A stretch of 64,000 nt of DNA, taken from Ranitomeya imitator. Its lineage: Eukaryota. Made by a program: the position numbers and the translations under genes. Below, in pieces: positions 496 through 51,975 of this stretch. The stretch covers positions 215,388,001-215,452,000 of the forward strand of contig NC_091288.1 in the NCBI RefSeq assembly GCF_032444005.1, read 5' to 3'. Under the pieces are notes generated by a model, which saw only the letters and a list, made by a program, of their open reading frames with translations, did not search any database and was not told the origin of the DNA. Position 1 is the first letter of the stretch; every line of letters begins with the position of its first letter.

Positions 496-526
496 TGCTG
501 AGTCACTGGGGCTGGCTGCAGTATAA
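496..526 (+). promoter_or_regulatory. NMRAL1-A core promoter: ARE/StRE TGCTGAGTCAC (496-506) and TATAA (522-526)
   Basis: Reverse complement GTGACTCAGCA matches the NRF2-sMaf/BACH1 consensus RTGACTCAGCA; TATA box ~60 nt before the ATG at 584. Motif-based only. Confidence 0.65.
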
Positions 527-12774: not shown

Positions 12775-18121
<5,347 letters not shown>

Positions 18122-18200: not shown

Positions 18201-18387
18201 GTGGACAAACAATGCCCAGGTGATGGCAGATCCCAGGGGCGCAGCTCATTTTTGTAAGCGGTCCAGCCAACCAGATCCGCGATTCTTAAGTCTCCATTAT
18301 TTACTGAGGAGCCGCGAATAACCTTCCACCCCCAAACTGAGCTCCAAAACCCGACCTCAGATTGTCCTCAGTTCACCCGCACAATCA

Positions 18388-28600: not shown

Positions 28601-31600
28601 TCTGCTGAGCCGTGTATCTAATCCTCTCCTGTGTGATACTGACTGCTGAGCCGTGTATCTAATCCTATCCTGTGTGATATTGACTGCTGAGCCGTGTATC
28701 TAATCCCATCCTGTGTGATACTGACTGCTGAGCCGTGTATCTAATCCTCTCCTATGTGATACTGTCTGCTGAGCCGTGTATCTAATCCTATCCTGTGTGA
28801 TACTGTCTGCTGATCCGTGTATCTAATCCTATCCTGTGTGATACTGTATGCTGAGCCGTGTATCTAATCCTCTCCTGTGTGATACTGACTGCTGAGCCGT
28901 GTATCTAATCCCATCCTGTGTGATACTGTCTGCTGAGCCATGTATCTAATCCTCTCCTGTGTGATACTGACTGCTGAGCCGTGTATCTAATCCTATCCTG
29001 TGTGATACTGTCTGCTGAGCCGTGTATCTAATCCTAGGCGGTGTGATACTGACTGCTGAGCTGTGTATCTAATCCCATCCTGTGTGATACTGTCTGCTGA
29101 GCCGTGTATCTAATCCTATCCTGTGTGATACTGTCTGCTGATCCGTGTATCTAATCCTATCCTGTGTGATACTGTATGCTGAGCCGTGTATCTAATCCTC
29201 TCCTGTGTGATACTGTCTGCTGAGCTGTGTATCTAATCCTCTCCTGTGTGATACTGACTGCTGATCCGTGTATCTAATCCTATCCTGTGTGATACTGTAT
29301 GCTGAGCCGTGTATCTAATCCTCTCCTGTGTGATACTGACTGCTGAGCCGTGTATCTAATCCCATCCTGTGTGATACTGTCTGCTGAGCCATGTATCTAA
29401 TCCTCTCCTGTGTGATACTGACTGCTGAGCCGTGTATCTAATCCTATCCTGTGTGATACTGTCTGCTGAGCCGTGTATCTAATCCTAGGCGGTGTGATAC
29501 TGACTGCTGAGCTGTGTATCTAATCCCATCCTGTGTGATACTGTCTGCTGAGCCGTGTATCTAATCCTATCCTGTGTGATACTGTCTGCTGATCCGTGTA
29601 TCTAATCCTATCCTGTGTGATACTGTATGCTGAGCCGTGTATCTAATCCTCTCCTGTGTGATACTGTCTGCTGAGCTGTGTATCTAATCCTCTCCTGTGT
29701 GATACTGACTGCTGATCCGTGTATCTAATCCTATCCTGTGTGATACTGTCTGCTGATCCGTGTATCTAATCCTATCCTGTGTGATACTGTATGCTGAGCC
29801 GTGTATCTAATCCTCTCCTGTGTGATACTGTCTGCTGAGCTGTGTATCTAATCCTCTCCTGTGTGATACTGACTGCTGATCCGTGTATCTAATCCTCTCC
29901 TGTGTGATACTGACTGCTGAGCCGTGTATCTAATCCTATCCTGTGTGATACTGTCTGCTGAGCCGTGTATCTAATCCTAGGCGGTGTGATACTGACTGCT
30001 GAGCTGTGTATCTAATCCCATCCTGTGTGATACTGTCTGCTGAGCCGTGTATCTAATCCTATCCTGTGTGATACTGTCTGCTGATCCGTGTATCTAATCC
30101 TATCCTGTGTGATACTGTATGCTGAGCCGTGTATCTAATCCCATCCTGTGTGATACTGTCTGCTGAGCCGTGTATCTAATCCTATCCTGTGTGATACTGT
30201 CTGCTGATCCGTGTATCTAATCCTATCCTGTGTGATACTGTATGCTGAGCCGTGTATCTAATCCTCTCCTGTGTGATACTGTCTGCTGAGCTGTGTATCT
30301 AATCCTCTCCTGTGTGATACTGACTGCTGATCCGTGTATCTAATCCTATCCTGTGTGATACTGTATGCTGAGCCGTGTATCTAATCCTCTCCTGTGTGAT
30401 ACTGACTGCTGAGCCGTGTATCTAATCCCATCCTGTGTGATACTGTCTGCTGAGCCATGTATCTAATCCTCTCCTGTGTGATACTGACTGCTGAGCCGTG
30501 TATCTAATCCTATCCTGTGTGATACTGTCTGCTGAGCCGTGTATCTAATCCTAGGCGGTGTGATACTGACTGCTGAGCTGTGTATCTAATCCCATCCTGT
30601 GTGATACTGTCTGCTGAGCCGTGTATCTAATCCTATCCTGTGTGATACTGTCTGCTGATCCGTGTATCTAATCCTATCCTGTGTGATACTGTATGCTGAG
30701 CCGTGTATCTAATCCTCTCCTGTGTGATACTGTCTGCTGAGCTGTGTATCTAATCCTCTCCTGTGTGATACTGACTGCTGATCCGTGTATCTAATCCTAT
30801 CCTGTGTGATACTGTATGCTGAGCCGTGTATCTAATCCTCTCCTGTGTGATACTGACTGCTGAGCCGTGTATCTAATCCTCTCCTGTGTGATACTGACTG
30901 CTGAGCCGTGTATCTAATCCTCTCCTGTGTGATACTGTCTGCTGAGCCGTGTATCTAATCCTCTCCTGTGTGATACTGACTGCTGAGCCGTGTATCTAAT
31001 CCTCTCCTGTGTGATACTGACTGCTGAGCCGTGTATCTAATCCTCTCCTGTGTGATACTGTCTGCTGAGCCGTGTATCTAATCCTCTCCTGTGTGATACT
31101 GACTGCTGAGCCGTGTATCTAATCCTATCCTGTGTGATATTGACTGCTGAGCCGTGTATCTAATCCCATCCTGTGTGATACTGACTGCTGAGCCGTGTAT
31201 CTAATCCTCTCCTATGTGATACTGTCTGCTGAGCCGTGTATCTAATCCTATCCTGTGTGATACTGTCTGCTGATCCGTGTATCTAATCCTATCCTGTGTG
31301 ATACTGTATGCTGAGCCGTGTATCTAATCCTCTCCTGTGTGATACTGACTGCTGAGCCGTGTATCTAATCCCATCCTGTGTGATACTGTCTGCTGAGCCA
31401 TGTATCTAATCCTCTCCTGTGTGATACTGACTGCTGAGCCGTGTATCTAATCCTATCCTGTGTGATACTGTCTGCTGAGCCGTGTATCTAATCCTAGGCG
31501 GTGTGATACTGACTGCTGAGCTGTGTATCTAATCCCATCCTGTGTGATACTGTCTGCTGAGCCGTGTATCTAATCCTATCCTGTGTGATACTGTCTGCTG

Positions 31601-33397
31601 ATCCGTGTATCTAATCCTATCCTGTGTGATACTGTATGCTGAGCCGTGTATCTAATCCTCTCCTGTGTGATACTGTCTGCTGAGCTGTGTATCTAATCCT
31701 CTCCTGTGTGATACTGACTGCTGATCCGTGTATCTAATCCTATCCTGTGTGATACTGTATGCTGAGCCGTGTATCTAATCCTCTCCTGTGTGATACTGAC
31801 TGCTGAGCCGTGTATCTAATCCCATCCTGTGTGATACTGTCTGCTGAGCCATGTATCTAATCCTCTCCTGTGTGATACTGACTGCTGAGCCGTGTATCTA
31901 ATCCTATCCTGTGTGATACTGTCTGCTGAGCCGTGTATCTAATCCTAGGCGGTGTGATACTGACTGCTGAGCTGTGTATCTAATCCCATCCTGTGTGATA
32001 CTGTCTGCTGAGCCGTGTATCTAATCCTATCCTGTGTGATACTGTCTGCTGATCCGTGTATCTAATCCTATCCTGTGTGATACTGTATGCTGAGCCGTGT
32101 ATCTAATCCTCTCCTGTGTGATACTGTCTGCTGAGCTGTGTATCTAATCCTCTCCTGTGTGATACTGACTGCTGATCCGTGTATCTAATCCTATCCTGTG
32201 TGATACTGTCTGCTGATCCGTGTATCTAATCCTATCCTGTGTGATACTGTATGCTGAGCCGTGTATCTAATCCTCTCCTGTGTGATACTGTCTGCTGAGC
32301 TGTGTATCTAATCCTCTCCTGTGTGATACTGACTGCTGATCCGTGTATCTAATCCTCTCCTGTGTGATACTGACTGCTGAGCCGTGTATCTAATCCTATC
32401 CTGTGTGATACTGTCTGCTGAGCCGTGTATCTAATCCTAGGCGGTGTGATACTGACTGCTGAGCTGTGTATCTAATCCCATCCTGTGTGATACTGTCTGC
32501 TGAGCCGTGTATCTAATCCTATCCTGTGTGATACTGTCTGCTGATCCGTGTATCTAATCCTATCCTGTGTGATACTGTATGCTGAGCCGTGTATCTAATC
32601 CCATCCTGTGTGATACTGTCTGCTGAGCCGTGTATCTAATCCTATCCTGTGTGATACTGTCTGCTGATCCGTGTATCTAATCCTATCCTGTGTGATACTG
32701 TATGCTGAGCCGTGTATCTAATCCTCTCCTGTGTGATACTGTCTGCTGAGCTGTGTATCTAATCCTCTCCTGTGTGATACTGACTGCTGAGCTGTGTATC
32801 TAATCCTCTCCTGTGTGATACTGACTGCTGAGCTGTGTATCTAATCCTATCCTGTGTGATACTGTCTGCTGATCCGTGTATCTAATCCTATCCTGTGTGA
32901 TACTGTATGCTGAGCCGTGTATCTAATCCTCTCCTGTGTGATACTGACTGCTGAGCCGTGTATCTAATCCCATCCTGTGTGATACTGTCTGCTGAGCCAT
33001 GTATCTAATCCTCTCCTGTGTGATACTGACTGCTGAGCCGTGTATCTAATCCTATCCTGTGTGATACTGTCTGCTGAGCCGTGTATCTAATCCTAGGCGG
33101 TGTGATACTGACTGCTGAGCTGTGTATCTAATCCCATCCTGTGTGATACTGTCTGCTGAGCCGTGTATCTAATCCTATCCTGTGTGATACTGTCTGCTGA
33201 TCCGTGTATCTAATCCTATCCTGTGTGATACTGTATGCTGAGCCGTGTATCTAATCCTCTCCTGTGTGATACTGTCTGCTGAGCTGTGTATCTAATCCTC
33301 TCCTGTGTGATACTGACTGCTGATCCGTGTATCTAATCCTATCCTGTGTGATACTGTCTGCTGAGCCGTGTATCTAATCCTATCCTGTGTGATACTG
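19638..33397. repeat. 41-bp satellite (gtatctaatcctctcctgtgtgatactgactgctgagccgt)n, ~335 units, with higher-order duplications
   Basis: Read directly; variant landmarks recur at offsets of 4100 and 2460 bp, both multiples of 41. Confidence 0.98.
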
Positions 33398-33454
33398 TTG
33401 TCCTCTCTGGTTACTTGTGATGTTCCTTTGTTTGTGTTAATAAAGCTTTATAGG

Positions 33455-33805: not shown

Positions 33806-36790
33806 AATACTGCCACATAGTGCTGAGACAATAGTACAGAGCCTAAATACTGCCACATGGTGCTGAGACAATAGGACAGAGCCTAAATACTGCCACATGG
33901 TGCTGAGACAATAGGACAGAACCTAAATACTGCCACATGGTGCTGAGACAATAGGACAGAGCCTAAATACTGCCACATAGTGCTGAGACAATAGGACAGA
34001 GCCTAAATACTGCCACAAAGTGCTGAGACAATAGTACAGAGCCTAAATACTGCCACATAGTGCTGGGACAATAGTACAGAGCCTAAATACTGCCACATAG
34101 TGCTGAGACAATAGCACAGAGCCTAAATACTGCCACATAGTGCTGAGACAATAGTACAGAGCCTAAATACTACCACATGATGCTGAGACAATAGTACAGA
34201 GCCTAAATACTGCCACATAGTGCTGAGACAATAGTACAGAGCCTAAATACTGCCACATGATGCTGAGACAATAGCACAGAGCCTAAATACTGCCACATAG
34301 TGCTGAGACAATAGCACAGAGCCTAAATACTGCCACATGGTGCTGAGACAATAGCACAGAGCCTAAATACTGCCACATGGTGCTGAGACAATAGCACAGA
34401 GCCTAAATACTGCCACATGGTGCTGAGACAATAACACAGAGCCTAAATACTGCCACATGGTGCTGAGACAATAGCACAGAGCCTAAATACTTCCACATGA
34501 TGCTGAGACAATAGCACAGAGCCTAAATACTGCCACATGGTGCTGAGACAATAGGACAGAGCCTAAATACTGCCACATGATGCTGAGACAATAGCACAGA
34601 GCCTAAATACTGCCACATGGTGCTGAGACAATAGTACAGAGCCTAAATACTGCCACATGGTGCTGAGACAATAGCACAGAGCCTAAATACTGCCACATGA
34701 TGCTGAGACAATAGCACAGAGCCTAAATACTGCCACATGGTGCTGAGACAATAGCACAGAGCCTAAATACTGCCACATGGTGCTGAGACAATAGCACAGA
34801 GCCTAAATACTGTCACATGGTGCTGAGACAATAGCACAGAGCCTAAATACTTCCACATGATGCTGAGACAATAGCACAGAGCCTAAATACTTCCACATGA
34901 TGCTGAGACAATAGCACAGAGCCTAAATACTGCCACATGGTGCTGAGACAATAGTACAGAGCCTAAATACTGCCACATGGTGCTGAGAAAATAGTACAGA
35001 GCCTAAATACTGCCACATGGTGCTGAGAAAATAGTACAGAGCCTAAATACTGCCACATAGTGCTGAGACAATAGTACAGAGCCTAAATACTGCCACATGA
35101 TGCTGAGACAATAGCACAGAGCCTAAATACTGCCACATGGTGCTGAGACAATAGGACAGAGCCTAAATACTGCCACATGGTGCTGAGACAATAGGACAGA
35201 GCCTAAATACTGCCACATGGTGCTGAGACAATAGGACCGAGCCTAAATACTGCCACATGGTGCTGAGACAATAGTACAGAGCCTAAATACTGCCACATGG
35301 TGCTGAGACAATAGGACAGAGCCTAAATACTGCCACATGATGCTGAGACAATAGTACAGAGCCTAAATACTGCCACATGGTGCTGAGACAATAGCACAGA
35401 GCCTAAATACTTCCACATGATGCTGAGACAATAGCACAGAGCCTAAATACTGCCACATGGTGCTGAGACAATAGCACAGAGCCTAAATACTGCCACATGG
35501 TGCTGAGACAATAGTACAGAGCCTAAATACTGCCACATGGTGCTGAGACAATAGTACAGAGCCTAAATACTGCCACATGGTGCTGAGACAATAGTACAGA
35601 GCCTAAATACTGCCACATGGTGCTGAGACAATAGTACAGAGCCTAAATACTGCCACATGGTGCTGAGACAATAGTACAGAGCCTAAATACTGCCACACGG
35701 TGCTGAGACAATAGGACAGAGCCTATATTCTGCCACACAGTGCTGAGACAATAGCACAGAGCCTAAATACTGCCACATGGTGCTGAGACAATAGCACAGA
35801 GTCTAAATACTGCCACATGGTGCTGAGACAATAGGACAGAGCCTAAATACAGCCACATGGTGCTGAGAGAATAGGACAGAACCTAAATACTGCCATATGG
35901 TGCTGAGACAATAGGACAGAGCCTAAATACTGCCACATGGTGCTGAGAGAATAGGACAGAGCCTAAATACTGCCATATGTTGCTGAGACAGTAGGACAGA
36001 GCCTAAATACTGCCACACGCTGCTGAGACAATAGCTCAGCTTAAATACTGCAACACGGTGCTGAGAGAATAGCACAGAGCTAAAATACTGCCGCACGGTG
36101 CTGAGACAATAGTACAGAGCCTAAATACTGCCACATGGTGCTGAGACAATAGTACAGAGCTTAAATGCTGCCACATGGTGCTGAGACAATAGGGCAGAGC
36201 TTAAATACTGCCATACAGTGCTTAGACAATAGTACAGAGCCTAAATATTGCCACATGGTGCTGAGACAATATTACGGAGCCTAAATACTGCCACATGCTG
36301 CTGAGACAATAGGACAGAGCCTAAATACTGCCACATAGTGTTGAGGCAATAGGTCAGAGCGTAAATGCTGCTACATTGTGCCGACAAGATAGTACAGAAC
36401 CTAAATACTGCCACATGGTGCTGAGACAGTAGTACAGAGCCTAAATACTGCCACATGCTGCTTAGACAATAGGACAGAGCCTAAATACTATCAAATGGTG
36501 CTGAGACAATAGGGCAGAGCCTAAATACTGCTACATGGTGCTGAGACGATAGTACAGAGCCTAAATATTGCCACATGGTGCTGAGACAATAGGACAGAGC
36601 CTAAATACTGCCACATTGTACTGAGACAATAGCTTAGGGCCTACATACTGCCACATGGCAATAGTACAGAGCCGAAATACTTCCACATAGTACAGAGCCT
36701 AAATTCTGCCCCATAGCACTGAGATAATAGTACAGAACCTAAATACTGACCTGTAGTGTTCAGATAATAGTACAGAGCCTATCCACTATT
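33806..36790. repeat. 40-bp minisatellite (gcctaaatactgccacatggtgctgagacaatagtacaga)n, decaying to ~37080
   Basis: 40-bp period read directly; ~73 units. Confidence 0.96.
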
Positions 36791-37507
36791 ATATACTGCT
36801 GAACAAATGCTGCCGTATATTAATGAAATAATACTGCATGCTGAGCCCAAATACTGCCATATAGTGCCTTATAGTACTGACATGTAGTGCCGAAATAATA
36901 GCAACAGCACAGAATCTAACTAGCATTGTCCACTGCTGAAATAATACTGCAATATAGTGCTGAAACATTAGTACCTATAGTGCCTAATAGTACTGACATG
37001 CTGCTGAAATAACAGTGTAAAGCTCAATTACCATCATTTAGTACATAATGCCGCCACATGGTGCTGAGATAATAGTAGAAAGCCTTACTACTGTCATCAA
37101 AAGCTGGGCGGCAGCGGTCATGAGAACGATGTGCAGCATGTGACCAATGCCAAGAATTGCTATTAAAGGGGGTGCGCGTAAAATAAAAATAAACAGCGGC
37201 ATAGTCGCTTTCCAGCGCCCTCCGCGGATTTGGCGGAGGATTGCGCCGGCTCTGGAAGCAATGCGTGCAGCATTGCTGTCTGTGATTGGCTGCAGCGGTC
37301 AGGTGACTAGAGGAGCTTGTGATCGGCTGCAGGCTGTCCTCTGACTTCCCACAGGAGCAGGCATCGCTTCTGGAGACGCTCGTTAGCGTCCGCTCTCCCT
37401 CCGTCTCAGTCTCGTTTATTGTTCTTATGTTTTTATATTTTGCACTTTTTTACCTTTTTTTGTCTTCCTTATAATATCTACGTGACTGGTACAATCCCGC
37501 CGCTTTC

Positions 37508-37708
37508 TGCTGAGTCACGCCACAATCACTCACTTCCTGTTTTTCGGGAACCATTGGATCTGCTGAGTCACTTTTAGAAAAAAAAAAAAAAGAAAATCCC
37601 TGAGTGCAGCAGAGGAATACGGAAGTGACTACGGAGGCAGCGGCTGGGATTGTATATATACAGGTCACCCTGCAGCCGGTCACCAGCTCTGCGCTGCACA
37701 CAGTAAGT
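37508..37708 (+). promoter_or_regulatory. Proximal promoter and short non-coding exon of HMOX2 copy 1: two TGCTGAGTCAC (37508-37518, 37561-37571), ETS sites (37531, 37620), ATTGG (37553), TATATATA (37653-37660), donor GTAAGT (37703)
   Basis: Motifs read directly; the donor pairs with the acceptor at 37823 to give a 121-nt intron; the region is conserved in the duplicate at ~51800-51975. Confidence 0.62.
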
Positions 37709-37864
37709 GACAGGTGTAGGGTGACAGGACCCCTGCGGGGGCATGCGGGGAGGCCGGCCTCTGGGCCCTAGAAGCTTTGTGCTCTCCTGCCTCATCCGCT
37801 TCTGTCTCTTTGTGTTTTAACAGGCGGCTGAAACTTTTCCATCCTCGCACAGAACACAGACGCC

Positions 37865-38638
37865 ATGTCCTCCGCACAGGAAGAGAGTGGGACGTACGGA
37901 GCCGCGTCCGGAGAGGAGGACCAGCAGCCCCTGAGGTGAGAGGGGGATCTGAGCACGGTATATGGCGCTGACATGTGCCCCCCATGGTCAGCACTCCGAT
38001 ATGGCGCAGATGTAGAGCACTGGTTCCGTCTGGGATTGTGGCGACCTGACACCCGCCACCTGGACGTGCCCCGGCTCACGTATTACGGGCAGCCTTTATA
38101 CGAGGCGTCGTTAACGTCCAAGATCCCGGCGGCGGCTCATGTCCACGTGACCCGTATACGTCAATCACACAACGCTCGCTCTCGTCTTGTTACAATGTGT
38201 CAGTGCAGCCAGAAGCGTATCAGTCCGGAGGGCGAGGTATAGTAATAGGGAGGTCTCAGCCCCTCCGATCAGGACGGGAAGCAGGAAAAATAGGGAAAAT
38301 AATGAGGAATCGAAACATAAAAAGAGATTAGAAAGTCTGAGAATTAAAAGAAATATATATATTTATATATACATATTTATTTTTATATATTTATTATTTA
38401 TATATTTACTATTTATATATATTATTCCTATTTACATATATNNNNNNNNNNNNNNNNNNNNNNNNNNNNNNNNNNNNNNNNNNNNNNNNNNNNNNNNNNN
38501 NNNNNNNNNNNNNNNNNNNNNNNNNNNNNNNNNNNNNNNNNNNNNNNNNNNNNNNNNNNNNNNNNNNNNNNNNNNNNNNNNNNNNNNNNNNNNNNNNNNN
38601 NNNNNNNNNNNNNATATATGTGTAAATATTATGTATGA

Positions 38639-38688
<50 letters not shown>

Positions 38689-41600
38689 TCATACATAATA
38701 TTTACACATATATTTACTATTTATTTGTAGTTACGGTATTTATTTTCATATATATAATTTTTCACTTCTTTTCTCTATCCGTTTAGTTTTATGCCTTTTT
38801 TTTTATTTTATAGAATTATTATTTGTTTTCCATTTTGAGTCTTATTAGATGTAAAGTGCGAAAGGTGAATATTTGTGTTGTTTTATACAGTGAAGGAAAT
38901 AAGTATTCGACCCCTCGCTGATTTTGTACGTTTGCCCACTGACAATGACATGAACAGTCTGTAATATCAAGGGTCGGTTAATTTTAACCTTGAGAGGTAG
39001 AATATCCAAAAATACAATCCGGAAAATCACATTGTATAAATGTATAAACTTACTAAATCAGCTAGGGATCGAATACTTATTTCCACCACTGTATTTCTTT
39101 TTACCTTTTGTACTTGTTGTTTTACACTCATAACAGACCCCCGGGGGGAATCCACACTTAGTTTCCAGGTTTGGGGCATCTAGAGGGAATATTAGTCTCT
39201 GGTGGGGCATGTGGGGGTCCTGACTTTGGTCACTGGGACCAGTAGGAGCTGTGATATTGACTCCTCTGGTTCTAAGCCTCCTCTGTCTTCCCCATTGGGC
39301 CTCAGCTTTGTCTTTTAGCCGAAAACCCAACCCGATAGATTTCAGGCGCTTTACATTTAATTTTTTTTTATCGTTTTTTTTTTTTTTCCAATTACATCCA
39401 GAGCAATTTTCAAAATTCTGCCCACGTCCTATGGGAAAAGACTGCAGTTTAGCTCCACATCTACCAGTCTTGTGACATCTCTGCCTTGCTCTCCATTCAC
39501 AGGAAACTGGCAGAATTCCGAATTCAGCTCTGAATGTGAACAGGAAAAAAAACCCGATAAAAAGCTGCAAAGTAAACGATTTACAGTTCCACAATCTCAG
39601 ATAGAATTTAGCTGACTCCATATTTTTTTCTCAAGATGGAGAAATTTCTTGCAGATTTTCGCCGCTTCCCTTTTTTTGCAGAGATTTCCTGTAAAAGAGA
39701 GCCATCGTCCTCTTGGTAATATCCGATGCCGGCCATCTTGTCTGACCGGGTCGCCCTCTTGTCTTCTCTAGGCCGACAGATCTGTCCGAGCTTCTCAAGG
39801 AAGGAACCAAAGTGTCTCACGAGAAGGCGGAAAACACGAAGTTCGTGAAGGATTTCCTTAAGGGTCGGATCAAGCGAGAATTATTTAAGGTGGGTGAAGG
39901 CTGAGTGTAAAACACGGACTGGTCGAGTCACCCAACGCCAGAACAATTCGCCTGGTGCCGTCCCCTCCTGCCAGTATCTTCTCCAGTCGTTTGTAAGAAA
40001 GCTGGGGGGCTCCAGTATCCAATATGGCCGCCGTCACCCAGCGCTAATAAAACATAAACCTTTATTCTAAAATCTACAAATGACCGAATTGACATAACAC
40101 ATGGTGCACTCGTGTATTTCCATTCCTAGAGTGACACAGAGAATTTGACAGAGAGACATTTTATTTGTATGACTACAATAGATCACATTGCGGAGACTTC
40201 TGGGATTTCGTTTCGTGTCAATTCTCGTTCGCCGTAGGAATTGAAATAAATGAGTGCACAATGTGGTATGTCAATTAGGTTATTTTAATATTTTAGAATA
40301 AAAGTTACTTTTTATTATCCCTTTCAGTGACTCTTAATATTTCAGGGCTAAATAAACCTATCATTGATATTGTCACCCAGCTTTGCCTGACTCCTGACCA
40401 GCAATTCTGACAAAATGGAATTATTTATAGCCGGGGTGATATCCCGTTACATACGGCTTCTTGTAGTTTCCGGGATTAGTGCAGATCCCCTGAGCGGTGA
40501 CATGACTAGGGACCTGTGTATCAGGTTGCAGGCTGCTCTACATCCTCCGCAGTCAGTAACAGAGTGGAGAGACCAGCTCCGCTGTATAATAATATATGTA
40601 TATGTGATGAATGTCTGCGGGATCACTCACCTATATATAGGGATAACGAACCAGTCACAGAGCAGATCCAGTTTCTGTCGCTCCCTGTTCCGTCGCTCCC
40701 TGTTCCGTCGCTCCCTGTTCCGTCGCTCCCTGTTCCGTCGCTCCCTGTTCCGTCGCTCCCTGTTCCGTCGCTCCCTGTTCCGTCGCTCCCTGTTCCGTCG
40801 CTCCCTGTTCCGTCGCTCCCTGTTCCGTCCCTCCCTGTTCCGTCCCTCCCTGTTCCGTCCCTCCCTGTTCCGTCCCTCCCTGTTCCGTCCCTCCCTGTTC
40901 CGTCCCTCCCTGTTCCGTCACTCCCTGTTCCGTCACTCCCTGTCCCGTCCCGTCCCTCCCTGTCCCGTCCCTCCCTGTCCCGTCCCGTCCCTCCCTGTCC
41001 CGTCCCTCCCTGTCCCGTCCCGTCCCTCCCTGTCCCGTCCCTCCCTGTCCCGTCCCGTCCCTCCCTGTCCCGTCCCGTCCCTCCCTGTCCCGTCCCGTCC
41101 CTCCCTGTTACTTCCCTCCATTTTCCGTCCCTCCCTGTTCCGTTTCTCCCTGTCCCGTCCCTCGCTTTTCTGTCCCTCGCTTTTCTGTCCCGTCCCTCCC
41201 TGTTCCGTCCCTCCCTGTTCCGTCCCTCCCTGTTCCGTCCCTCCCTGTTCCGTCCCTCCATTTTCCGTCCCTCCCTGTTCCGTCCCTCCCTGTCGCGTCC
41301 CTCGCTTTTCTGTCCCTCCCTGTTCCGTCCCTCCCTGTCCTGTTCCGTCCCTCCCTCTTCCGTCCCTCCCTCTTCCGTCCCTCCCTGTCCCGTCCCTCCC
41401 TGTTCCGTCCCTCCCTGTCCCGTCCCTCCCTTTTCCGTCCCTCCCTTTTCCGTCCCTCCCTTTTCCGTCCCTCCCTTTTCCGTCCCTCCCTTTTCCGTCC
41501 CTCCCTTTTCCGTCCCTCCCTGTTCCGTCCCTCCCTGTTCCGTCCCTCCCTTTTCCATCCTAGTTTTTGTGTAAAAACGCCAATATAAATGTGATATCGC

Positions 41601-44600
41601 TGTAATCGTACTGATCTGCAGAATGAAGCTTCCTTATCAATTTTACCACACGCGGAATGGCATTAAAAAAAACCTGAATTTGCTAGTTTTTGTTAATGCT
41701 CTGTCCCAAAAATAAGAATAGAAAGCGATCAAAAAATGTCATGACCGAAAACAGTACCAATAAAACGTCAGCTCGTCCCACAAAAAACAAGCTATCAAAA
41801 TATGGCGATGCAAAAACTAGTTTTGAAGTTTAAGTGTGTGACAGCACAAGGAACGGCGTAAAAGAAATCAACTATTCTTCACCTGTTGTTAATTTTTTTA
41901 TTCTGCCTCCCAAAGATCGCAGTAAGGCTAAGCACATATTTAACCTGCTCTCTGCGCTGAGCGCTTACACCGTGTTTTCCATGTAAATCTCTGAAATACT
42001 TGATTCAGACGGAACCTCTGGTGAAAGGTTCCCTATAATGAGGCAGATTATTATTATTATTATTCATTTTTATAGCGCCATTTATTCCATGGCGCTTTAC
42101 ATGTGAACGGGGCAAATATTGACAAGTACAATAAACATGAGTAAAACAAGGCACACACAAGAACAGGAGGAGAGAGGACCCTGCCCGCGAGGGCTCACAG
42201 TCTACAGGGGATGGGTGAGAATACACTAGGTGAGGGTAGAGCTGGTCATGTGGCGCTTCAGTAGACAGGGGATCACTGCAGGTTGTAGGCTTGTCGGAAG
42301 AGGTGGGTCTTCAGGTTCTTTTTGAAGGTTTCCGTGGTAGGTGAGAGCCTGATGTTTTGGGGTAGAGAGTTCCAGAGTATGGGGGAAGCACGGGAGAAGT
42401 CTTGGATGCGGTTGTGGGAGGAAGAGATGAGAGGGGAGTAGAGAAGGAGATCATGAGATGATCGAAGGTTGCATGTAGGTAGGTAACGGGAGACCATGTC
42501 ACAGATGTATGGAGGAGTCAGATTGTGAATGGCTTTGTATGTCATTGTTAGTGTTTTGAACTGTAGCCTCTGGGCAATAGGAAGCCAGTGAAGGGCCTGG
42601 CAGAGAGGAGAGGCTGGGGAGTAACGGGGAGACAGGTGGATTAGTCGGGCAGCAGAGTTTAGGATGGATTGGAGTGGGCCAGAGTGCTAGAGGAAAGTCC
42701 AGAGAGTAGGAGGTTGCAGTAGTCGAGGCGGGAGATGATAAGGGCATGTACTAGTGTTTTTGTGGCTTAATGGTCAAGGAATGCACGGATCCGGGAAATG
42801 TTTTTGAGTTGGAATCGGCAAGAGGAGGCAAGGGCTTGGATATGTGGCTTGAAAGAGAGTGTAGAGTCAAGGATCACCCCGAGGCACCGAGCGTGCGGGG
42901 CCAGGGAAAGTGAGCAGCCATTGACATTGATGGATAGGTCGGGTGGAGGGGTAGAGTGAGATGGGGGAAAGATGATGAATTCTGTTTTGTCCATGTTCAG
43001 TTTTAGAAAACGAGCAGAAAAGAAGGATGAAATAGCAGACAGACATTGTGGGATTTTGGTCAGTAAGGAAGTGAGGTCGGATCCAGATAGGTAGATCTGC
43101 GTGTCATCAGCGTAGAGATGATATTGTAAACCGTAGGATTCTATGAGCTGTCCCAGGTCGAAGGTGTAGATGGAGAAGAGTAGGGGTCCTAGAACTGAGC
43201 CTTGGGGAACACAGACAGACAAGGGGCGAAGTGAGGAGGTGGTGTGGGAGAGGGAGACACTGAATGTACGATCTGTTAGATATGATGAGATCCAGGATAG
43301 GGCCAAGTCTGTGATGCCAAGAAATGAGAGAATCTGTAACAGGAGGGAGTGGTCCACAGTGTCGAAGGCAAAAGACAGGTCCAAGAGGAGGAGGACAGAG
43401 TAGTGTCGCTTGCTCTTGGCGGTTAGTAGGTCATTGGTCACTTTAGTTATGGCAGTTTCAGTTGAGTGATGTGTTCGGAAGCCAGATTGTAACCGGTCAA
43501 AGAGGGAGCAGGAGGAGAGGTGGGAGGACAGTTCAAGATGGACATGCTGTTCCAGTAGTTTTGAGGCATAAGGGAGAAGGGATATCAGGCAATAGCTGGA
43601 CACAGAGGATGGGTCGAGGGAGGGTTTTTTGAGGATAGGTGTGATTGATGCTTGTTTGAAGGATGAGGTGAAGACACAGTTTGTAAGTGAGAGGTTGAAG
43701 AGTTGTGTTAGGGTTGGGATGAAGACTTTTGCGAGGTTAGGGATGAGGTGGGACGTGAGCGGGTCAAGGGTGCAAGTGGTGAGATGTGATCTTGATAGAA
43801 GGATGGAGAGCTGATCGTCTGTCATGGTGGAGAAGCTGGCTTTGGAACAGGGCTGAGAAGTCAAGAGGAGGGGCATTGGGGGCTGCGGGCCAAAGCTTTG
43901 TCTGATGTTTTCTATCTTCTGCTTAAAGAAAGATTCAAATTCTTCAGCTTAAATGAGAGGGGAGGGAGGAGATGCTGGGGGACAGAGTAGAGAATTGAAA
44001 GTGTTGAAGAGCTGTTTAGGGTTGTGAGTCGGGGAGGATATGAGAGATGAGATGTAAGTTTGTTTTGCGGCAGTGAGCGCGGACTTGAAGCTGGCGAGGG
44101 ACTGCTTGTATGCAGTGAAGTGCTCAGCAGAACGAGATTTCTTCCATCGCCGTTCAGCGATCCTGGAAGCCCGTCTCAGTTCTTTGGTCAGGCTGGTCAG
44201 CCAGGGCTGCCTGTTGATTCAACGAGTTTTGCTATGCATGAGTGGGGCGGCCGAATCGAGTGTTGCTGTTATTGTGGTGTTATAAAAAGAGGCAGCAGCA
44301 TCTGTGTCATGGAAGGAAGCTATGTCTGTAAGAGGGAGAAGGGACTCAGAGAGTGATTGTAAATTGAGGTGTTTGAGATTTCTGCGAGGGTGAGTGAGTT
44401 TGTGGAGTGGAGGTTGCGCGAGAGGAGAGAGAAGAAAATGTCAGTAGGTTGTGGTCAGACAGGGGGAGGGGTGAGTTAGTGAGATTAGTAAGGGAATAGA
44501 GGCGGGTGAAGATGAGGTCCAATGTGTGGCCATCTTTATGGGTGGCTGCAGATGACCATTGAGTGAGACGAAAGGAGACAGTGGGCGATAAAAGTTTAGA

Positions 44601-47600
44601 GGCGGCTGAGGTGGAAGTGTCAATGGGGATATTGAAGTCACCCATGATGATCGTGGGGATGTCGGCTGAGAGAAAATGAAGTAGCTAGATGGTGAAGTGG
44701 TCAATAAAAGGTGGAGATGGCTAGTTCTGGGGGGGCGGTACATGACAGCCAGCTGGAGATTGGAGGGGGAGTAGATGCAGATGGAGTGCACCTTGAATGA
44801 GGGAAGAGTAGCAGAGGGTGGTAGTGGAATTGGGGTAAAGGAGCAGGTATCGTACAGGAGCAAGCCAACCCCTCCACCATGTTTGTTGCTGGGGCGAGGG
44901 GTGTGAGAGAGGTGGAATCCACCATAGGAAAGAGCGGCTGGAGAGGCTGAGTCAGAGGCGGTGAGCCAGGTTTCAGTGATGCCGAGGAAGGAGAGTTTGT
45001 TATTGATAAAGAGGTCTTGGATAAATGACAGTTTATTGCAGACAAGAGCGTGCGTTCCATAGTGCTCCAGGTAGGGAAATTGGGGGAGTGGGGGCTGGAT
45101 GAATGGGTATGAGGTTACTGTGGTTGCGAGGACGTGTAGAGGATCGTGGCAGGGGATTAGAAATGAGTGTGGGGATGTGATGAGGAGGGCCAGGATTTGG
45201 GGATATGTCGCCAGCAATGAGGAGCAGCAGACAGAGCGTTAGAAGGTGTGAGCAGGATAGGTCATGATGTGGCCGTGTGTGTCTGGAGAGAAAGGATTGT
45301 GTGTGGAGGAATAGTTCTGTGGAGGAGGTGAGGTGACTGGGGAGGATGGAGGAAGAAATGACTAGTTCCTTACTGGGTGGAGGGATTACAGGAGATAGGA
45401 AGAAATAAAGTAGTATGGGGGTGAATGTTACAGGAAACCGAAACATTATTGAAGTTTTCTATTCCTTTACCTTCCAGTTAATTCCAGTCCAATTCATGGT
45501 AATTAAAAATCTATAATTTAAAAGATGGAATTTCAAAGATGGTCAGACACGTCTGGTCAGACTCATGGCTTTGAATTTATGTGCACCTAAGGGCTCACAG
45601 CTGAGAGGGGGGATGTGGGCCTGTGTGTGTCCAGAGCACATGTTCACAGTTAAGAAGGTAATAAAGAGGGGGTGGGGTAGATGGCCACTCAGGTATGCCA
45701 GGAAGACACAAGAGGAGTGAAATACATATGGATAGAAAATAATGGGTAAGCAAAGCATGCCAGGTGGCAATTACATGCACTTCACATAGACAGACATAGC
45801 AGGAAAAGCTGAGTAGATGAGCAGCATACCAGGTGGCAATTATATGCACTTCATATAGAAAGACATAGCAGGAAAAGCTGAGTAGATGAGCAGCATACCA
45901 GGTGGCAATTATATGCACTTCATATAGAAAGACATAGCAGGAAAAGCTGAGTAGATGAGCAGCATACCTGTGGGTAGACAAAACAACTCGATTAGATGAT
46001 GCAGTTGGTGATGAGGATGATGAAAGTACAGCTGTGATGAATGGGTAAATGCTTCATGGAATTCTAGTCTAATTCATGGTAATTAAAAATCTAATTTAAA
46101 AGATGGAATTTCAAAGATGGTCAGACACGTCTGGTCAGACTCATGGCTTTGAATTTAAGATGGAGGCAGATGGAGGCACTATGGATGCCTTCTGACCTAT
46201 GATCTAGCGGTGTTCGTTTTTTTTAGGTGTATTAGTAACACATGGATCGACAGCCTATAAAATGTTCACACCCCCTTGTCTGCATCCTGTATACAGCTCG
46301 CCACGGGTGCTCTGTACTACACGTATTCTGCGCTGGAAGAGGAGCTTGACCGAAACAAGGAGAACCCGGCCATCGCACCCCTGTATTTCCCTCAGGAGCT
46401 GCACAGGGCGGAGGCGCTACAGAAAGATGTCACCTACTTCTATGGTGAAGATTGGAAGGACACGATCCAGTGCTCTGAGGCCACACAGGCTTACGTAGAC
46501 CGGATCCGCCACTTAGGCCGTCACAAGCCAGAACTGCTGGTGGCTCACGCCTACACCAGGTACATGGGGGATCTGTCAGGAGGTCAAGTCCTGAAGAAGG
46601 TGGCACAGAGAGCCCTGCACCTGCCCAACACCGGGGAAGGGATCCAGTTCTACATGTTTGATAATGTCACGAATGCCCAGCAGTTCAAGCAACTCTACAG
46701 GGCCCGACTCAACACACTGGAACTGAATGCCAAGGCGAAGGAGGACATGGTGGAAGAAGCAAACAAAGCCTTCCAGTTTAATATGCAGGTATGTGTCTAA
46801 CAGTGCCTGGAATTATGAGAACTATAATGCCGCCCTTATGTACAAGAATGTAACTACTATAATACTGCTCTTATGTACAAGAATATAACTACTATAATAC
46901 TGCCCCCTATGTACAAAAATATAACTACTATATTACTGCCCCTATGTACAAGAATAACACTACTATAATACTGCTCCTATGTTCAAGAATATAACTACTA
47001 TATTACTGCTCCTATGTACAAGAATATATCTACTATAATACTGCCCCCTATGTACAAGAATATAACTACTATAATACTGCGTCATGTACAAGAATATAAC
47101 TACTATAATACTGGCCCTATGTACAAGAATATAACTACTATAATACTGCTCCTATGTGCAAGAATATAACTACTATAATATGCTCCTATGTACAAGAATA
47201 TAACTCCTATAATACTGTCCCCTATGTACAAGAATATAACTACTATCATACTGCTCCTGTGTACAAGAATATAACTACTATAATACTGCTGCTATGTACA
47301 AGAATATAACTACTATAATACTGCTCCTATGTACAAGAATATAACTACTATAATACTGCTCCTATGTACAAGAATATAACTACTATAATACTGCTCCTAT
47401 GTACAAGAATATAACTACTATAATACTGCTCCTATGTACAAGAATATAACTACTATAATACTGCCCCTATGTACAAGAATATAACTACTATAATACTGCC
47501 CCTATGTACAAGAATATAACTACTATAATACTGCTCCTATGTACAAGAATATAACTACTATAATACTGCTCCTATGTACAAGAATATAACTACTATAATA

Positions 47601-48551
47601 CTGCTCCTATGTACAAGAATATAACTAATATAATACTGCTCCTATGTACAAGAATATAACTACTATAATACTGCCCCTATGTACAAGAATATAACTACTA
47701 TAATACTGCTCCTATGTACAAGAATATAACTAATATAATACTGCTCCTATGTACAAGAATATAACTACTATAATACTGTCCCCAATGTACAATAATATAA
47801 CTACTATAATACTGCTCCTATGTACAAGAATATAACTACTATAATACTGCTGCTATGTACAAGAATATAACTCCTATAATACTGTCCCCAATGTACAATA
47901 ATATAACTACTATAATACTGCTCCTATGTACAAGAATATAACTACTATAATACTGCCCCTATGTGCAAGAATATAACTACTATAATACTGCTCCTATGTA
48001 CAAGAATATAACTACTATAATACTGCCCCTATGTACAAGAATATAACTCCTATAATACTGTCCCCAATGTACAATAATATAACTACTATAATACTGCCCC
48101 TATGTACAAGAATATTACTGCTATAATACTGACCTTATGTACAGGAATATAACTATAATACTGCCCCCTATATTGAAGTGATTGTGGTAATTTTGTACTT
48201 TTTCATTTTCTGAAGGTATTTGAGGAGTTGGATAAGATAGGAACCACCATCCCTGATGAAGCACAAGATGGCGGACTTCCAGTGCATGATGGGAAGGGAG
48301 ATATTCGCAAATGCCCGTATTATGCTGCAAAAGGTGCGTGTAGGTGTCACACATTACATATGTACACATACGTAAATACGCACAGTATAGTGATGTGCAG
48401 GGGTCTCATCTCCTCCTCTCTCGCAGATGCTGCCTCCTCAGGATGTCCACTCCACGCTGCTCTGGCTCTAACAGGTCGCCCGGAAGTTAAAGCAGCACTA
48501 GCCGCTTTCGCCGCCGCCATCGCTGCCACCATCGCTTGGTATCTTATGTGA
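37865..48551 (+). CDS. HMOX2: Heme oxygenase 2, copy 1, 307 aa; coding exons 37865-37935, 39772-39889, 46297-46788, 48216-48333, 48427-48551 (exon acceptor at 37823, 41-nt UTR)
   Basis: In-frame GT-AG exons of 71/118/492/118/125 nt: MSSAQEES...[29 protein letters not shown]...[21 protein letters not shown]...RKCPYY...GCPLH...AWYLM. Two C-terminal Cys-Pro heme regulatory motifs and a membrane anchor identify HO-2 rather than HO-1. The third mammalian CP (VQCP) is IQCS here. Adjacency to NMRAL1 matches mammalian gene order. Confidence 0.96.
38442..38613. other. Assembly gap (172 N) in AT-rich low-complexity sequence
   Basis: N run flanked by TA-rich tracts. Confidence 0.99.
38888..39091. mobile_element. 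204-bp non-autonomous Tc1/mariner element
   Basis: TA|cagtgaaggaaataagtattcga ... tcgaatacttatttccaccactg|TA: terminal inverted repeats with TA target duplication. Confidence 0.85.
40675..41555. repeat. Pyrimidine-rich minisatellite (gctccctgttccgtc, 15 bp) grading into shorter variants
   Basis: Read directly; source of the SLFRR/PVPSL/GTEQG periodic ORFs. Confidence 0.93.
42048..46170 (-). mobile_element. Near full-length, frameshifted L2-clade LINE in HMOX2 intron
   Basis: (TAA)n tail at ~42048; RT fragments ([34 protein letters not shown]) in 42767..43876; APE endonuclease (GITETWL, MGDFN) in 44346..45217; N-terminal [13 protein letters not shown]. 5' boundary is approximate. Confidence 0.9.
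46822..48172. repeat. 35-bp minisatellite (ctatgtacaagaatataactactataatactgctc)n filling an HMOX2 intron; reverse complement of 13352-16256
   Basis: Same unit as the NMRAL1-B array on the opposite strand. Confidence 0.96.
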
Positions 48552-48715: not shown

Positions 48716-51113
48716 GAACTGCCGGGAAGGGGGTTTCTCGGCCTAGGGAGTATTAACCCCTTAATGTTCAGATTCAGGGGTTATATGCACTATAACTGTG
48801 TTCTAATAGGTCGGTGAGCACAGCCATAAGCACACAATAGGTCTTACCCTAGAAGTCGCCATTGGCTGCTCATCTACCACTTACTGTATATTACGAGATG
48901 TGTTGAGAGGATTTAGCCATATGTATATGCAAGACTCCCAAAGATGATTTCATGATTTATTACGGATGAAGTATTAATGGTTTGGTGCTGCCACGTGAGG
49001 AAACCATCTTGTTTTTGGAGCTGTAGTTCCTCGTAGATTTTTAGATATACTGTGACGCCAATATGGCCGGCCATCGACACAGCCCGGAATTTCGTGCCTC
49101 TTTGAGAATCCATTCACTTCTAACAGTTTACTCATCAGATTTTACATATCGATCATTGAAGATCATCCATCCAATATGGCCGCCGTGACACCTTTCCTGA
49201 GGGCTACAATGGGATTTTGCCTAGTGATGCATCTCCTGTTTGCCTTTTTTACAGTCTGACCACCACTGTTGCTGCCATATTGTTTTTGAACCAGATTTTC
49301 CAGAAATGGATTTCTAAGAAATTGCTAAGAATTTGGATTTTTAGGGGGATAACGCTGTGTAAATATCACCAGTAACAGAGACTAGGTGTAGGCGGCCATA
49401 TTGGTGACCTTAGATTACAACTAGAGAGGCGCAAATAACATTGTGCCTCATACCTCATTACTCCATCAACGGTTTGGCTAGAAAATGGCCGCCTTTTGCT
49501 GTCCTTAATTCTTACAAGGTAACGGTTGTGTGAGTGTGCGGAGCTCGGATGTCTGAGCCGTTCCTCGCTTGGAGATAACAAAAGGAGCTTTTTGTGTAAC
49601 TCAATAAATTATATTAAAATATCGAATGTGTAAGTTGTTCCTACTTCGGATGCTTTTATCGTGGACAAGCGGCGCCCGTATCAATCAATATTTTCCTCAA
49701 TGACTCCTCGAGACACTTTCTCTTCCATTGACCTCAGTCGTATGAGAGTGTCTGGTTGCTATTCACTCTGTTTGTCCACAACAACCGGTCTGTCAGACAT
49801 GATTAAGTTGTTTAACTCTGTCATCCCTTGTCATCCGGCATTATTATTAATCAGACGTTTTCCCAAAATTTGACTCCCCTGCCTCAGGAAGAGGGCATCA
49901 CCTCCAACAGCCCCCTCTATTTACTGTATTCACGTCATCAGTCATGTTTTATGTTCTCTGTCAGACTATATCACCACCCACAGGCAGACAGAGGCTTCGA
50001 CAAAACATGGGGCACTGCACTCCGACCATGTTTGTCAGAACTGTTTTATAATCCATGGCAACCAATCAGCTTCTTATTCCACCACAGAGCAACCAATCAG
50101 AGCTCAGCTTTCGTTTTACCTCAGCAGTGTAAGATTTGACTGAGGTGGTCATCTACTCTGTCAGTCAGTGTTTCTCTGTGGCAGGCGGTAGGAATGTGTA
50201 TGTCTCCATCATGGCGAGTTGTGATAGTCAAGACCGATGTACCCGACACATTGTAATTGGCCACCGGATACGGAGGTAGACGGCCATGTAGAGTCGTCAC
50301 AATAGATCATGGCGGATGAATAATGATAATCTTTATTTTTATATAGCGCTAACATATTCCGCAGTGCTTTACAGTTTGAACACATGATCATAGATGAAGT
50401 GCGATTCTATGGAACTGGGTGTGTTGCCTCACAGAAAACTCGCATGAAAAAAAATCTCCCCTTTATGACCCCAAAATCTGTGTTTTGATGCTCGGATCAT
50501 GGGTTTTATATTCTGTGGTGAGAATGTGAACACATCCATGTAGGGGAACTTCTTCCTAAAATTTCTTGCACAGGGTCCTGTTTGTAGCCCACCCTGGCTT
50601 TACTTCCAATTGGAGACCACTTTAGTAAATCATTCTCCCCACAGCCAGGTCTCCGTATAATGATCTTTGGTTGCCAATAGAAATGGCTTTCTGTCCTACT
50701 TCTCCGGAAAGGATCAGAGCCTCTGTAGTAGATGACAGTGTAAGTGAAAGGAAGATTATATTGTCATATGTGCATGAGCTGCCAGAGGGGGGAGGAGACT
50801 TATCTTCTCAAAAGCACAGAATGGCTTCATGTGGAAGCAAAAAATGCTTAAAAATGTATCTTGATACTAGAAAAAAAGATGACTCAAGGACTTAAATTTA
50901 CCGAGGGCTAAAACAAAGTTTTGTGGCTCATGTCGTGATATTTTTTACTTTGGCCATAACAAACCACAATGAGTGAAGTTTTTTGGCTCTATTTAAGTAA
51001 TGGGAACTAAATATAAACCCACGGAATAAAATCCACCTTGATCACGGCTTGTGAGGAGCAGTGTAGTGGAAACTAATCCATAGGCTGGCTGGAACGTTGG
51101 ACATCTTGTTAAG

Positions 51114-51800: not shown

Positions 51801-51975
51801 TCACGTTTCTGCACTTTTAGGGAACCATTGGATCTGTTTAGTCACATTTTTATTAAAATAATAAATAAACCCTGACTACAGCAGAGACTTACGGAAGTAA
51901 TCATGGGAGGTAGCTGCTGGGATTGCATATATGGAGGTCACCCTGCAGCTGGTCATGTGCGTTGCTCTGAACAGA
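51801..51975 (+). promoter_or_regulatory. Degenerate duplicate of the HMOX2 proximal promoter (upstream of copy 2)
   Basis: gggaaccattggatctg, cagcagag, tacggaagt, ctgggattg, ggtcaccctgcagc are collinear with 37545-37682; ARE reads TGTTTAGTCAC, TATA reads CATATATG, donor absent. Confidence 0.8.

What the first reader, a model, noticed from the sequence alone, without database searches (positions are those of the whole stretch)
37508..37708. HMOX1-style tandem StREs and a TATA box on an HMOX2 gene
Two perfect TGCTGAGTCAC, 53 bp apart, lie 80-145 bp upstream of TATATATA, followed by a short exon and GTAAGT donor. Expected chance count of this 11-mer in 64 kb on both strands is ~0.03 at uniform composition. 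Known: clustered TGCTGAGTCA elements mediate BACH1 repression and NRF2 induction of HMOX1, whereas mammalian HMOX2 is constitutive. Inference: this HO-2 is heme/oxidant-inducible.
Basis: partly seen in the sequence, partly recalled or inferred. Interest (0 to 1): 0.75.

Follow-up and report, generated by a model that had tools for sequence, protein, structure and literature searches.

The report
Conserved twin stress elements, frog HMOX2
Two exact copies of the DNA motif through which heme and oxidants switch on heme oxygenase-1 in mammals sit just upstream of the supposedly constitutive heme oxygenase-2 gene of a poison frog; a distantly related frog keeps both at the same spacing, so they are very likely a working control element, but nobody has yet measured whether the gene is inducible.

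Summary
TGCTGAGTCAC occurs exactly at 37508 and 37561. TATATATA is at 37653-37660, GTAAGT at 37703-37708, and the ATG at 37865. The gene is Ranitomeya imitator HMOX2 copy 1: its five coding exons reproduce a 307-aa database protein, and it falls in the HO-2 clade with 100/100 support.

The key new result is conservation. Eleutherodactylus coqui has both sites at the homologous place, in the same orientation and with the same 53-bp spacing. The 70 bp that span them are 90% identical, against 35% just upstream and 72% in the coding part of exon 2. Spea bombifrons keeps a recognisable but degenerate version. The dead promoter of the tandem HMOX2 copy 2 (51.8 kb) has lost both sites.

So this is a selected cis-regulatory module of two ARE/MARE sites and ETS sites. 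It is most likely read by NRF2/BACH1-small Maf dimers.

Two things are not shown. There is also no evidence of induction.

A third exact site sits on the neighbouring NmrA-like gene and is conserved in Spea.

The scan holds no earlier follow-up of this locus. My call is a new variant of a known kind, of moderate interest.

The parts
37508..37518 (+). Distal StRE/ARE/MARE, TGCTGAGTCAC. The block conserved between species begins here.
   Evidence: Exact match. The identical 11-mer sits at the homologous place in E. coqui, L010 10624. Identity falls to 35% immediately upstream.
37531..37539 (-). ETS-type site (CAGGAAGTG on the minus strand) between the two StREs.
   Evidence: Read from the sequence. 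Identical in E. coqui, and its ACTTCCTGTTT core is also kept in Spea. The factor assignment rests on consensus only.
37561..37576 (+). Proximal StRE/ARE/MARE, TGCTGAGTCAC. With its 3' flank it fits the 16-bp extended ARE.
   Evidence: E. coqui has TGCTGAGTCAG at L010 10677, also 53 bp from the distal site. The hyloid X RNA contig L001 starts at the GTCAG of this site. Spea has TGCTGCGTCAG here.
37578..37591 (+). A-run of 14 between the proximal StRE and the second ETS site.
   Evidence: Present with varying length in E. coqui and hyloid X. Two RNA contigs of hyloid X break inside it.
37620..37627 (+). Second ETS-type site, CGGAAGTG.
   Evidence: Its TACGGAAGT core is invariant in R. imitator copy 1, copy 2, E. 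coqui and hyloid X; the last base of CGGAAGTG is A in copy 2.
37653..37660 (+). TATATATA, a candidate TATA box whose use is not shown.
   Evidence: ATATATAC is conserved in E. coqui and hyloid X and partly in copy 2. It lies inside spliced RNA contigs of hyloid X.
37683..37702 (+). 3' end of non-coding exon 1. The start shown assumes a TATA-directed start; the true 5' end is unknown and may lie at or upstream of 37567. The GTAAGT donor follows at 37703-37708.
   Evidence: The donor is homologous to the exon 1/exon 2 junction seen by comparing spliced contigs L001, L003 and L004 with intron-retaining L002. The distance from TATA to donor is 50 nt here, 52 in E. coqui and 59 in hyloid X.
37824..37935 (+). 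Exon 2, with the ATG at 37865. The acceptor is either the AG at 37822-23 or the AG at 37851-52.
   Evidence: tblastn with P0121 and P0002. An exon chain with GT/AG borders reproduces P0121 exactly. Hyloid X uses the homologue of the downstream acceptor.
39772..39889 (+). HMOX2 coding exon 3.
46297..46788 (+). HMOX2 coding exon 4, the catalytic core.
   Evidence: It scores 277 bits to human HO-2 chains against 209 to HO-1.
48216..48333 (+). HMOX2 coding exon 5, containing the first Cys-Pro heme-regulatory motif.
48427..48551 (+). HMOX2 last coding exon, with the second Cys-Pro motif, the membrane anchor and the stop codon.
51812..51965 (+). Decayed copy of the module, belonging to tandem HMOX2 copy 2. 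The proximal site is now TGTTTAGTCAC, the distal site is unrecognisable, and the donor is lost.
   Evidence: Alignments. Copy-2 exons lie at 59543-59629 and 63586-63705.
496..506 (+). Third exact TGCTGAGTCAC, 16 nt upstream of TATAAGGA (522-529) of NmrA-like gene A (ATG at 584). It is a neighbouring gene, not part of HMOX2.
   Evidence: Spea has the same 11-mer about 50 nt upstream of the TATAAA of its NmrA gene.

Best explanation
The 37505-37702 block is the conserved proximal regulatory module of Ranitomeya imitator HMOX2 (copy 1). Two TRE-type ARE/MARE (StRE) sites lie 53 bp apart and flank an ETS site. An A-run, a second ETS site, a TATA-like element and the end of a short non-coding exon 1 follow. 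The likely mechanism is as follows. Small-Maf heterodimers with CNC-bZIP partners occupy the two sites. BACH1-sMaf represses when free heme is low. Heme removes BACH1, and NRF2-sMaf, stabilised by electrophiles or oxidants, then activates. ETS factors supply basal activity. HO-2 in hyloid frogs would thus be tunable by heme and oxidative stress rather than purely constitutive. What is shown: the motifs, their statistical excess, the HO-2 identity of the gene, and strong purifying selection on both sites and their spacing. What is inferred: which factors bind, the direction of regulation, inducibility, and the position of the start site.
For: The 11-mers are exact and far above chance. They account for 3 of only 4 ARE cores in 128 kb of scanned strand, and one fits the extended ARE. 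HO-2 identity rests on four results: 277 against 209 bits versus solved human HO-2 and HO-1; a 100/100 HO-1/HO-2 split with this protein inside anuran HO-2; two C-terminal Cys-Pro motifs; and NmrA-like neighbours, as also in Spea. E. coqui carries both sites at the homologous place with identical spacing, and they are the only two TGASTCA in its 19.9-kb contig. Identity is 63/70 across the pair, against 35% upstream, 59% in intron 1 and 72% in the exon 2 coding part. By my own arithmetic, keeping 21 of 22 site bases at the intron-1 identity of 0.59 has a probability of about 1.5e-4. In Spea the homologous proximal site keeps the ARE core GCnnnGTCA but not the AP-1 core TGASTCA. That favours a CNC-sMaf reader over AP-1. 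Spea HMOX2 also has a tandem MARE/TRE pair in intron 2. Copy 2, whose module is separated from its exon 2 by 7.6 kb, has lost both sites. StRE, MARE and ARE are one element, and BACH1 and NRF2 act through it (PMC7997353; PMC6189649).
Against: The TGAGTCA core is also a perfect AP-1 site, and the whole 70 bp is conserved, so the conserved flank does not by itself single out Maf or NRF2. Mammalian HO-2 is constitutive, with only a GRE described (PMC6907065; bioRxiv 10.64898/2026.05.07.723605). Zebrafish hmox2 was unchanged by tBHQ at 0.97-fold (PMC4234671). Spea lacks perfect sites at this position. In another hyloid frog the module downstream of the proximal site is part of spliced RNA, so part of the conservation could act at RNA level. 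AREs can also support basal rather than induced expression.
Confidence: 0.6

Rival explanations
1. The module is an AP-1/ETS composite promoter element. Jun/Fos dimers on the two TGAGTCA cores cooperate with ETS factors such as GABP to give constitutive or growth-factor/MAPK-responsive HO-2 transcription. NRF2 and BACH1 play no part, and there is no heme sensing.
For: Both sites contain the perfect TRE TGAGTCA. An ETS site lies between them and a second, invariant one lies downstream. ETS plus AP-1 composites are a classical promoter design (own knowledge). HO-2 is constitutive in mammals, and zebrafish hmox2 is not induced by tBHQ.
Against: The TGC flank needed by Maf/CNC dimers is present at both sites in both frogs. 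The Spea homologue keeps the ARE core while breaking the TRE. The same 11-mer marks the NmrA-like neighbour in two distant frogs, and a human NmrA-like pseudogene is a direct NRF2 target (PMC7555619).
Confidence: 0.22
2. The conserved block is mainly a transcribed 5'UTR (exon 1) element that acts on the RNA, for example on translation or stability. The StRE-like words are then incidental to that constraint.
For: Spliced RNA contigs from three runs of another hyloid frog contain the block from the A-run, and in one case from the proximal site, through TATA to the exon 1 donor. A 24/28 inverted repeat, 37313-37340 against 37662-37689, could pair if transcription started further upstream.
Against: The distal site and the first ETS site lie upstream of every RNA contig end seen. 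Conservation starts exactly at the distal site and is highest between the sites. The inverted repeat is not evident in E. coqui. Two exact copies of a well-known protein-binding motif are hard to explain by an RNA function.
Confidence: 0.1
3. The pair is chance or a relic of a repeat and has no function.
For: The window is very repeat-rich, and its satellites carry one-mismatch versions of the motif. An inverted repeat brackets the module.
Against: Shuffles expect 0.11 copies. An orthologous pair with identical spacing and 90% identity exists in another frog family. The only other copy of the module in the window is the paralogous one.
Confidence: 0.03

Closest known systems
Mammalian Hmox1 E1/E2 enhancers (clustered StRE = MARE = ARE sites, BACH1 repression, NRF2 induction)
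   Same: The core word (T/C)GCTGAGTCA is the same, it occurs in more than one copy in a short stretch, and it sits on a heme oxygenase gene.
   Different: The paralogue here is HO-2, not HO-1. There are two sites within about 200 bp of exon 1 instead of enhancers at -4 and -10 kb. Binding and induction have not been measured.
Human NQO1 promoter ARE
   Same: From my own knowledge, the NQO1 ARE core GTGACTCAGCA is the reverse complement of this exact 11-mer. It is a TRE-type ARE in a proximal promoter region that supports both basal and induced expression.
   Different: NQO1 has a single site in an unrelated gene. I recalled this resemblance from memory and did not test it here.
Mammalian HMOX2 promoter
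   Same: It is the orthologous gene, with the same protein features (Cys-Pro motifs, membrane anchor) and the same neighbourhood with an NmrA-like gene (the human arrangement is own knowledge).
   Different: It is described as constitutive, with only a glucocorticoid response element identified (PMC6907065). No StRE pair has been reported in the papers I could search.
Human NMRAL2P, an NRF2-driven NmrA-like pseudogene
   Same: It is an NmrA-like locus under direct NRF2 control (PMC7555619). The frog NmrA-like gene A and its Spea counterpart carry the same perfect ARE next to a TATA box.
   Different: The frog genes look intact and lie next to HMOX2. I did not test orthology to NMRAL2P.

Membership tests
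StRE / ARE / MARE (CNC-bZIP-small Maf recognition element) | The sequence fits (T/C)GCTGAGTCA and RTGACnnnGC | tested here: met
   Both sites are exact. The proximal one also fits TMAnnRTGAYnnnGCR.
StRE / ARE / MARE (CNC-bZIP-small Maf recognition element) | The site is evolutionarily conserved at the orthologous locus | tested here: met
   E. coqui has both sites with the same 53-bp spacing, and 63/70 bases are identical. Spea has a degenerate version.
StRE / ARE / MARE (CNC-bZIP-small Maf recognition element) | The site is bound by NRF2-sMaf or BACH1-sMaf | not testable with these tools
   This needs ChIP, CUT&RUN or EMSA with frog proteins.
StRE / ARE / MARE (CNC-bZIP-small Maf recognition element) | The site confers induction by heme, electrophiles or heavy metals | not testable with these tools
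HMOX1-type distal StRE enhancer | The StRE cluster lies in enhancers several kb upstream (-4 and -10 kb) | tested here: not met
   The sites lie 132 and 185 bp upstream of the exon 1 donor. The enhancer positions come from PMC7997353.
HO-2 (HMOX2) orthologue | The protein falls in the HO-2 clade, not the HO-1 clade | tested here: met
   IQ-TREE gives a 100/100 split. The protein scores 277 against 209 bits versus solved human HO-2 and HO-1.
HO-2 (HMOX2) orthologue | There are C-terminal Cys-Pro heme-regulatory motifs before the membrane anchor | tested here: met
   KCPYY and GCPLH are seen in exons 5 and 6 and in P0121.
HO-2 (HMOX2) orthologue | The gene shows conserved synteny with an NmrA-like gene | tested here: met
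   NmrA-like genes flank HMOX2 in the window, in Spea and in E. coqui.
TATA-box core promoter | The sequence matches TATAWAWR | tested here: met
   TATATATA lies at 37653-37660 and is conserved in E. coqui and hyloid X.
TATA-box core promoter | Transcripts start about 25-35 nt downstream | tested here: inconclusive
   No reads could be laid. Spliced RNA contigs of hyloid X include the TATA and about 100 nt upstream of it. A TATA-directed start would give an exon 1 of only about 20-29 nt.

The most novel reading that the evidence does not exclude
In hyloid frogs HO-2 is a genuinely heme- and oxidant-inducible enzyme under BACH1/NRF2 control. Together with the adjacent NmrA-like NADPH-sensor gene, whose perfect ARE is conserved as far as Spea, it forms a small ARE-regulated neighbourhood. 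CNC-sMaf control would then be ancestral to the HO-2 lineage and lost in mammals. The dendrobatid tandem duplication would have split the gene into an inducible membrane-bound copy 1 and a copy 2 that has lost the sites, the Cys-Pro motifs and the anchor.
Probability: 0.3. Interest if true: 0.7.

Novelty: new variant of a known kind. Interest (0 to 1): 0.5.

Why it matters
HO-2 is the textbook constitutive heme oxygenase, and its regulation outside mammals is almost unstudied. A selected pair of perfect ARE/MARE sites at its promoter predicts lineage-specific rewiring of heme catabolism. It also gives a clean natural experiment: copy 1 has the sites and copy 2 lacks them in the same genome. 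The parallel, older ARE on the neighbouring NmrA-like gene links a redox-sensor gene family to NRF2 control well beyond the human NMRAL2P pseudogene.

Tried and rejected
Steps that failed or led nowhere:

Local scripts only scanned the whole window for motifs or used it as a BLAST subject.
I therefore could not test the closest relatives.
- The look-up for Leptodactylus P0125 found no record.
- Two metagenome scans with conserved 20- and 21-mers from the module found nothing.
- No R. imitator transcript proteins are in the protein collection, so I could recover no 5'UTR contig of this species.
- Intron-retaining contigs L005, L006 and L008 gave no promoter information.
- Two papers were not held: the zebrafish hmox paralogue paper, looked up by DOI, and Sun et al. 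2002.

Ideas considered and rejected:

- I rejected a simple local duplication as the origin of the pair, because only 13 nt are shared.
- I rejected a recent transposon origin, because an orthologous copy exists in E. coqui.

One step deliberately left out: I checked the joined five-exon protein model only inside a local script, for equality with P0121, and sent it to no search tool.

Full report
**Observation.** The sequence at 37200-38100 shows TGCTGAGTCAC at 37508-37518 and 37561-37571. TATATATA is at 37653-37660, GTAAGT at 37703-37708, a pyrimidine tract and AG at 37822-23, and an ATG at 37865. A pattern search finds three exact copies in the window, all on the + strand; the third is at 496. 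Dinucleotide shuffles expect 0.11 copies, and none of 100 shuffles reaches three. With one mismatch allowed there are 76 hits. Nearly all are units of two satellites (19638-33398 and 33806-36658) that carry TGCTGAGCCA or TGCTGAGACA. A wider scan finds only four matches to the ARE core RTGACnnnGC on both strands of the window, and three of them are these sites. The proximal site also fits the 16-bp extended ARE. The two HMOX2 sites share just 13 nt, so they are not a fresh local duplication.

**The gene.** The large exon at 46297-46788 scores 277 bits against solved human HO-2 chains and 209 against HO-1. The best database proteins come from dendrobatid frogs. P0121, the 307-aa HO-2 of Ranitomeya imitator, matches the window at 100% within exons. 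Its recorded gene span of 10,687 bp equals 37865-48551. In a local script, five exons with GT/AG borders (37865-37935, 39772-39889, 46297-46788, 48216-48333, 48427-48551) translate exactly to P0121. I sent this joined model to no search tool. A maximum-likelihood tree separates HO-1 from HO-2 with 100/100 support and places this protein inside anuran HO-2. The protein has the two C-terminal Cys-Pro motifs and the membrane anchor. NmrA-like genes flank it here, in Spea and in E. coqui. The window therefore holds R. imitator HMOX2 copy 1. A tandem copy 2 follows, with exons at 59543-59629 and 63586-63705, as other first-stage notes say (s1-307449, s1-307412).

- *Eleutherodactylus coqui* (L010). 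TGCTGAGTCAC lies at 10624 and TGCTGAGTCAG at 10677. These sit 418 and 365 bp upstream of the ATG at 11042, in the same orientation and with the same 53-bp spacing as in R. imitator. They are the only two TGASTCA words in the contig.
- A global alignment gives 35% identity upstream of the distal site, which is noise level. It gives 90% (63/70) from the distal to the proximal site, 92% at the second ETS site, 64% from TATA to the donor, 59% in intron 1 and 72% in the coding part of exon 2. The conserved block thus begins exactly at the distal site and is better kept than the coding sequence beside it.
- By my own arithmetic, keeping 21 of the 22 site bases at the intron-1 identity of 0.59 has a probability of about 1.5e-4.
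- *An unidentified hyloid frog, 'hyloid X'* (runs SRR5149xxx). RNA contigs carry the same block from the GTCAG of the proximal site onwards.
- *Spea bombifrons* (L009). The block is recognisable: ACTTCCTGTTT is kept. The distal position reads TGCTGGTTACC and the proximal one TGCTGCGTCAG, which keeps the ARE core but not the AP-1 core. Spea also has CGCTGAGTCAGC and TCTGAGTCAG 11 nt apart in intron 2.
- *R. imitator copy 2*. Its module (51812-51965) has lost both sites and the donor.

**Anatomy and the start site.** The exon 2 acceptor is ambiguous: it may be the AG at 37822-23 or the AG at 37851-52, and hyloid X uses the homologue of the downstream one.

The TATA-like word is conserved. Its distance to the donor is 50 nt in R. 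imitator, 52 in E. coqui and 59 in hyloid X, so a start 30 nt after it would give a first exon of only about 20-29 nt. On the other hand, all three spliced contigs of hyloid X include the TATA region and about 100 nt upstream of it. Two of them break inside the A-run, which probably reflects a length-variant branch. One reaches the proximal site. At least some transcripts in that frog therefore start at or upstream of the proximal site. The start site stays open. The two sites are either about 110-175 bp upstream of a TATA-directed start, or they straddle or lie just inside a longer exon 1.

**Mechanism.** StRE, MARE and ARE are names for one element, the dominant element of the Hmox1 enhancers at -4 and -10 kb (PMC7997353). 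BACH1-small Maf dimers repress through it, and heme relieves that repression (PMC6189649). Two perfect, selected copies on a heme oxygenase gene make CNC-small Maf control the most economical reading, which I hold at confidence 0.6.

- The main rival is an AP-1/ETS composite element, because TGAGTCA is also a perfect TRE and two ETS sites are conserved alongside it (0.22). The Spea site, which keeps the ARE core while losing the TRE, and the recurrence of the same 11-mer on the NmrA-like neighbour speak mildly against it.
- An RNA-level role for a transcribed exon 1 is possible for the downstream part of the block (0.10).
- Chance or a repeat relic is effectively excluded (0.03).

Inducibility has not been tested. 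Mammalian HO-2 is constitutive, with only a GRE described (PMC6907065; bioRxiv 10.64898/2026.05.07.723605). A zebrafish hmox2 probe was unchanged by tBHQ (PMC4234671).

**Novelty.** Searches of the held papers found no description of StRE/ARE/MARE sites on an HMOX2 promoter in frogs or other vertebrates. One review calls HO-2 a downstream target of Nrf-2 in passing (PMC11892469). The element type and the pathway are well known. What is new is the paralogue, the proximal position and the lineage, so I class this as a new variant of a known kind. The scan holds no earlier follow-up of this locus.

**Limits.** Cross-species evidence rests on two genomic loci and one set of RNA contigs. The closest relatives and the ranoid and pipid frogs could not be fetched. 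All statements about binding factors are inference from consensus.

Noticed in passing
window 496-529 and 584; L009 4944-4954 (-): A third exact TGCTGAGTCAC lies 16 nt upstream of the TATAAGGA of NmrA-like gene A (ATG at 584, exon 2 at 6758-6997). Spea bombifrons has the same 11-mer about 50 nt upstream of the TATAAA of the NmrA gene next to its HMOX2. This ARE therefore looks conserved across very distant frogs. A human NmrA-like pseudogene, NMRAL2P, is a direct NRF2 target (PMC7555619).
   Followed up: partly
window 18080-18230 (-): NmrA-like gene B is head-to-head with HMOX2, with exon 1 at 18133-18080 and exon 2 at 17010-16771. At the matching promoter place it has CCACTGAGTCAC followed by TATAAGAG. 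The TRE is kept but the GC box is lost.
   Followed up: partly
L009 10402-10425: Spea HMOX2 intron 2 holds a near-palindromic MARE, CGCTGAGTCAGC, and a TRE, TCTGAGTCAG, 11 nt apart and about 400 bp after the ATG. This may be turnover of the degenerate upstream sites.
   Followed up: no
window 19638-33398 and 33806-36658: Two satellites, with 41-bp and 40-bp units and about 400 units in all, fill the space between NmrA-like gene B and HMOX2. Each unit carries a one-mismatch StRE (TGCTGAGCCA or TGCTGAGACA), which is a Maf half-site. This may be coincidence.
   Followed up: no
window 37313-37340 and 37662-37689: A 28-nt inverted repeat, 24/28 complementary, brackets the StRE module. Related GGCTGCAG..GGTCA words recur at 37107 and 37288. 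It is not evident in E. coqui, and its meaning is unknown.
   Followed up: partly
window 51812-51965, 59543-59629, 63586-63705; P0001, P0002: HMOX2 copy 2 has a decayed copy of the module 7.6 kb from its exon 2. The copy-2 proteins annotated in R. variabilis and P. terribilis end before the Cys-Pro motifs and the membrane anchor. The R. variabilis model uses a first exon homologous to window 50211-50288.
   Followed up: partly
L001 90-130: In the unidentified hyloid frog the TATA-containing 32-nt segment is tandemly duplicated in RNA contigs from three runs.
   Followed up: no
window 38442-38613: There is an assembly gap (N run) in HMOX2 intron 2. I left it untouched.
   Followed up: no
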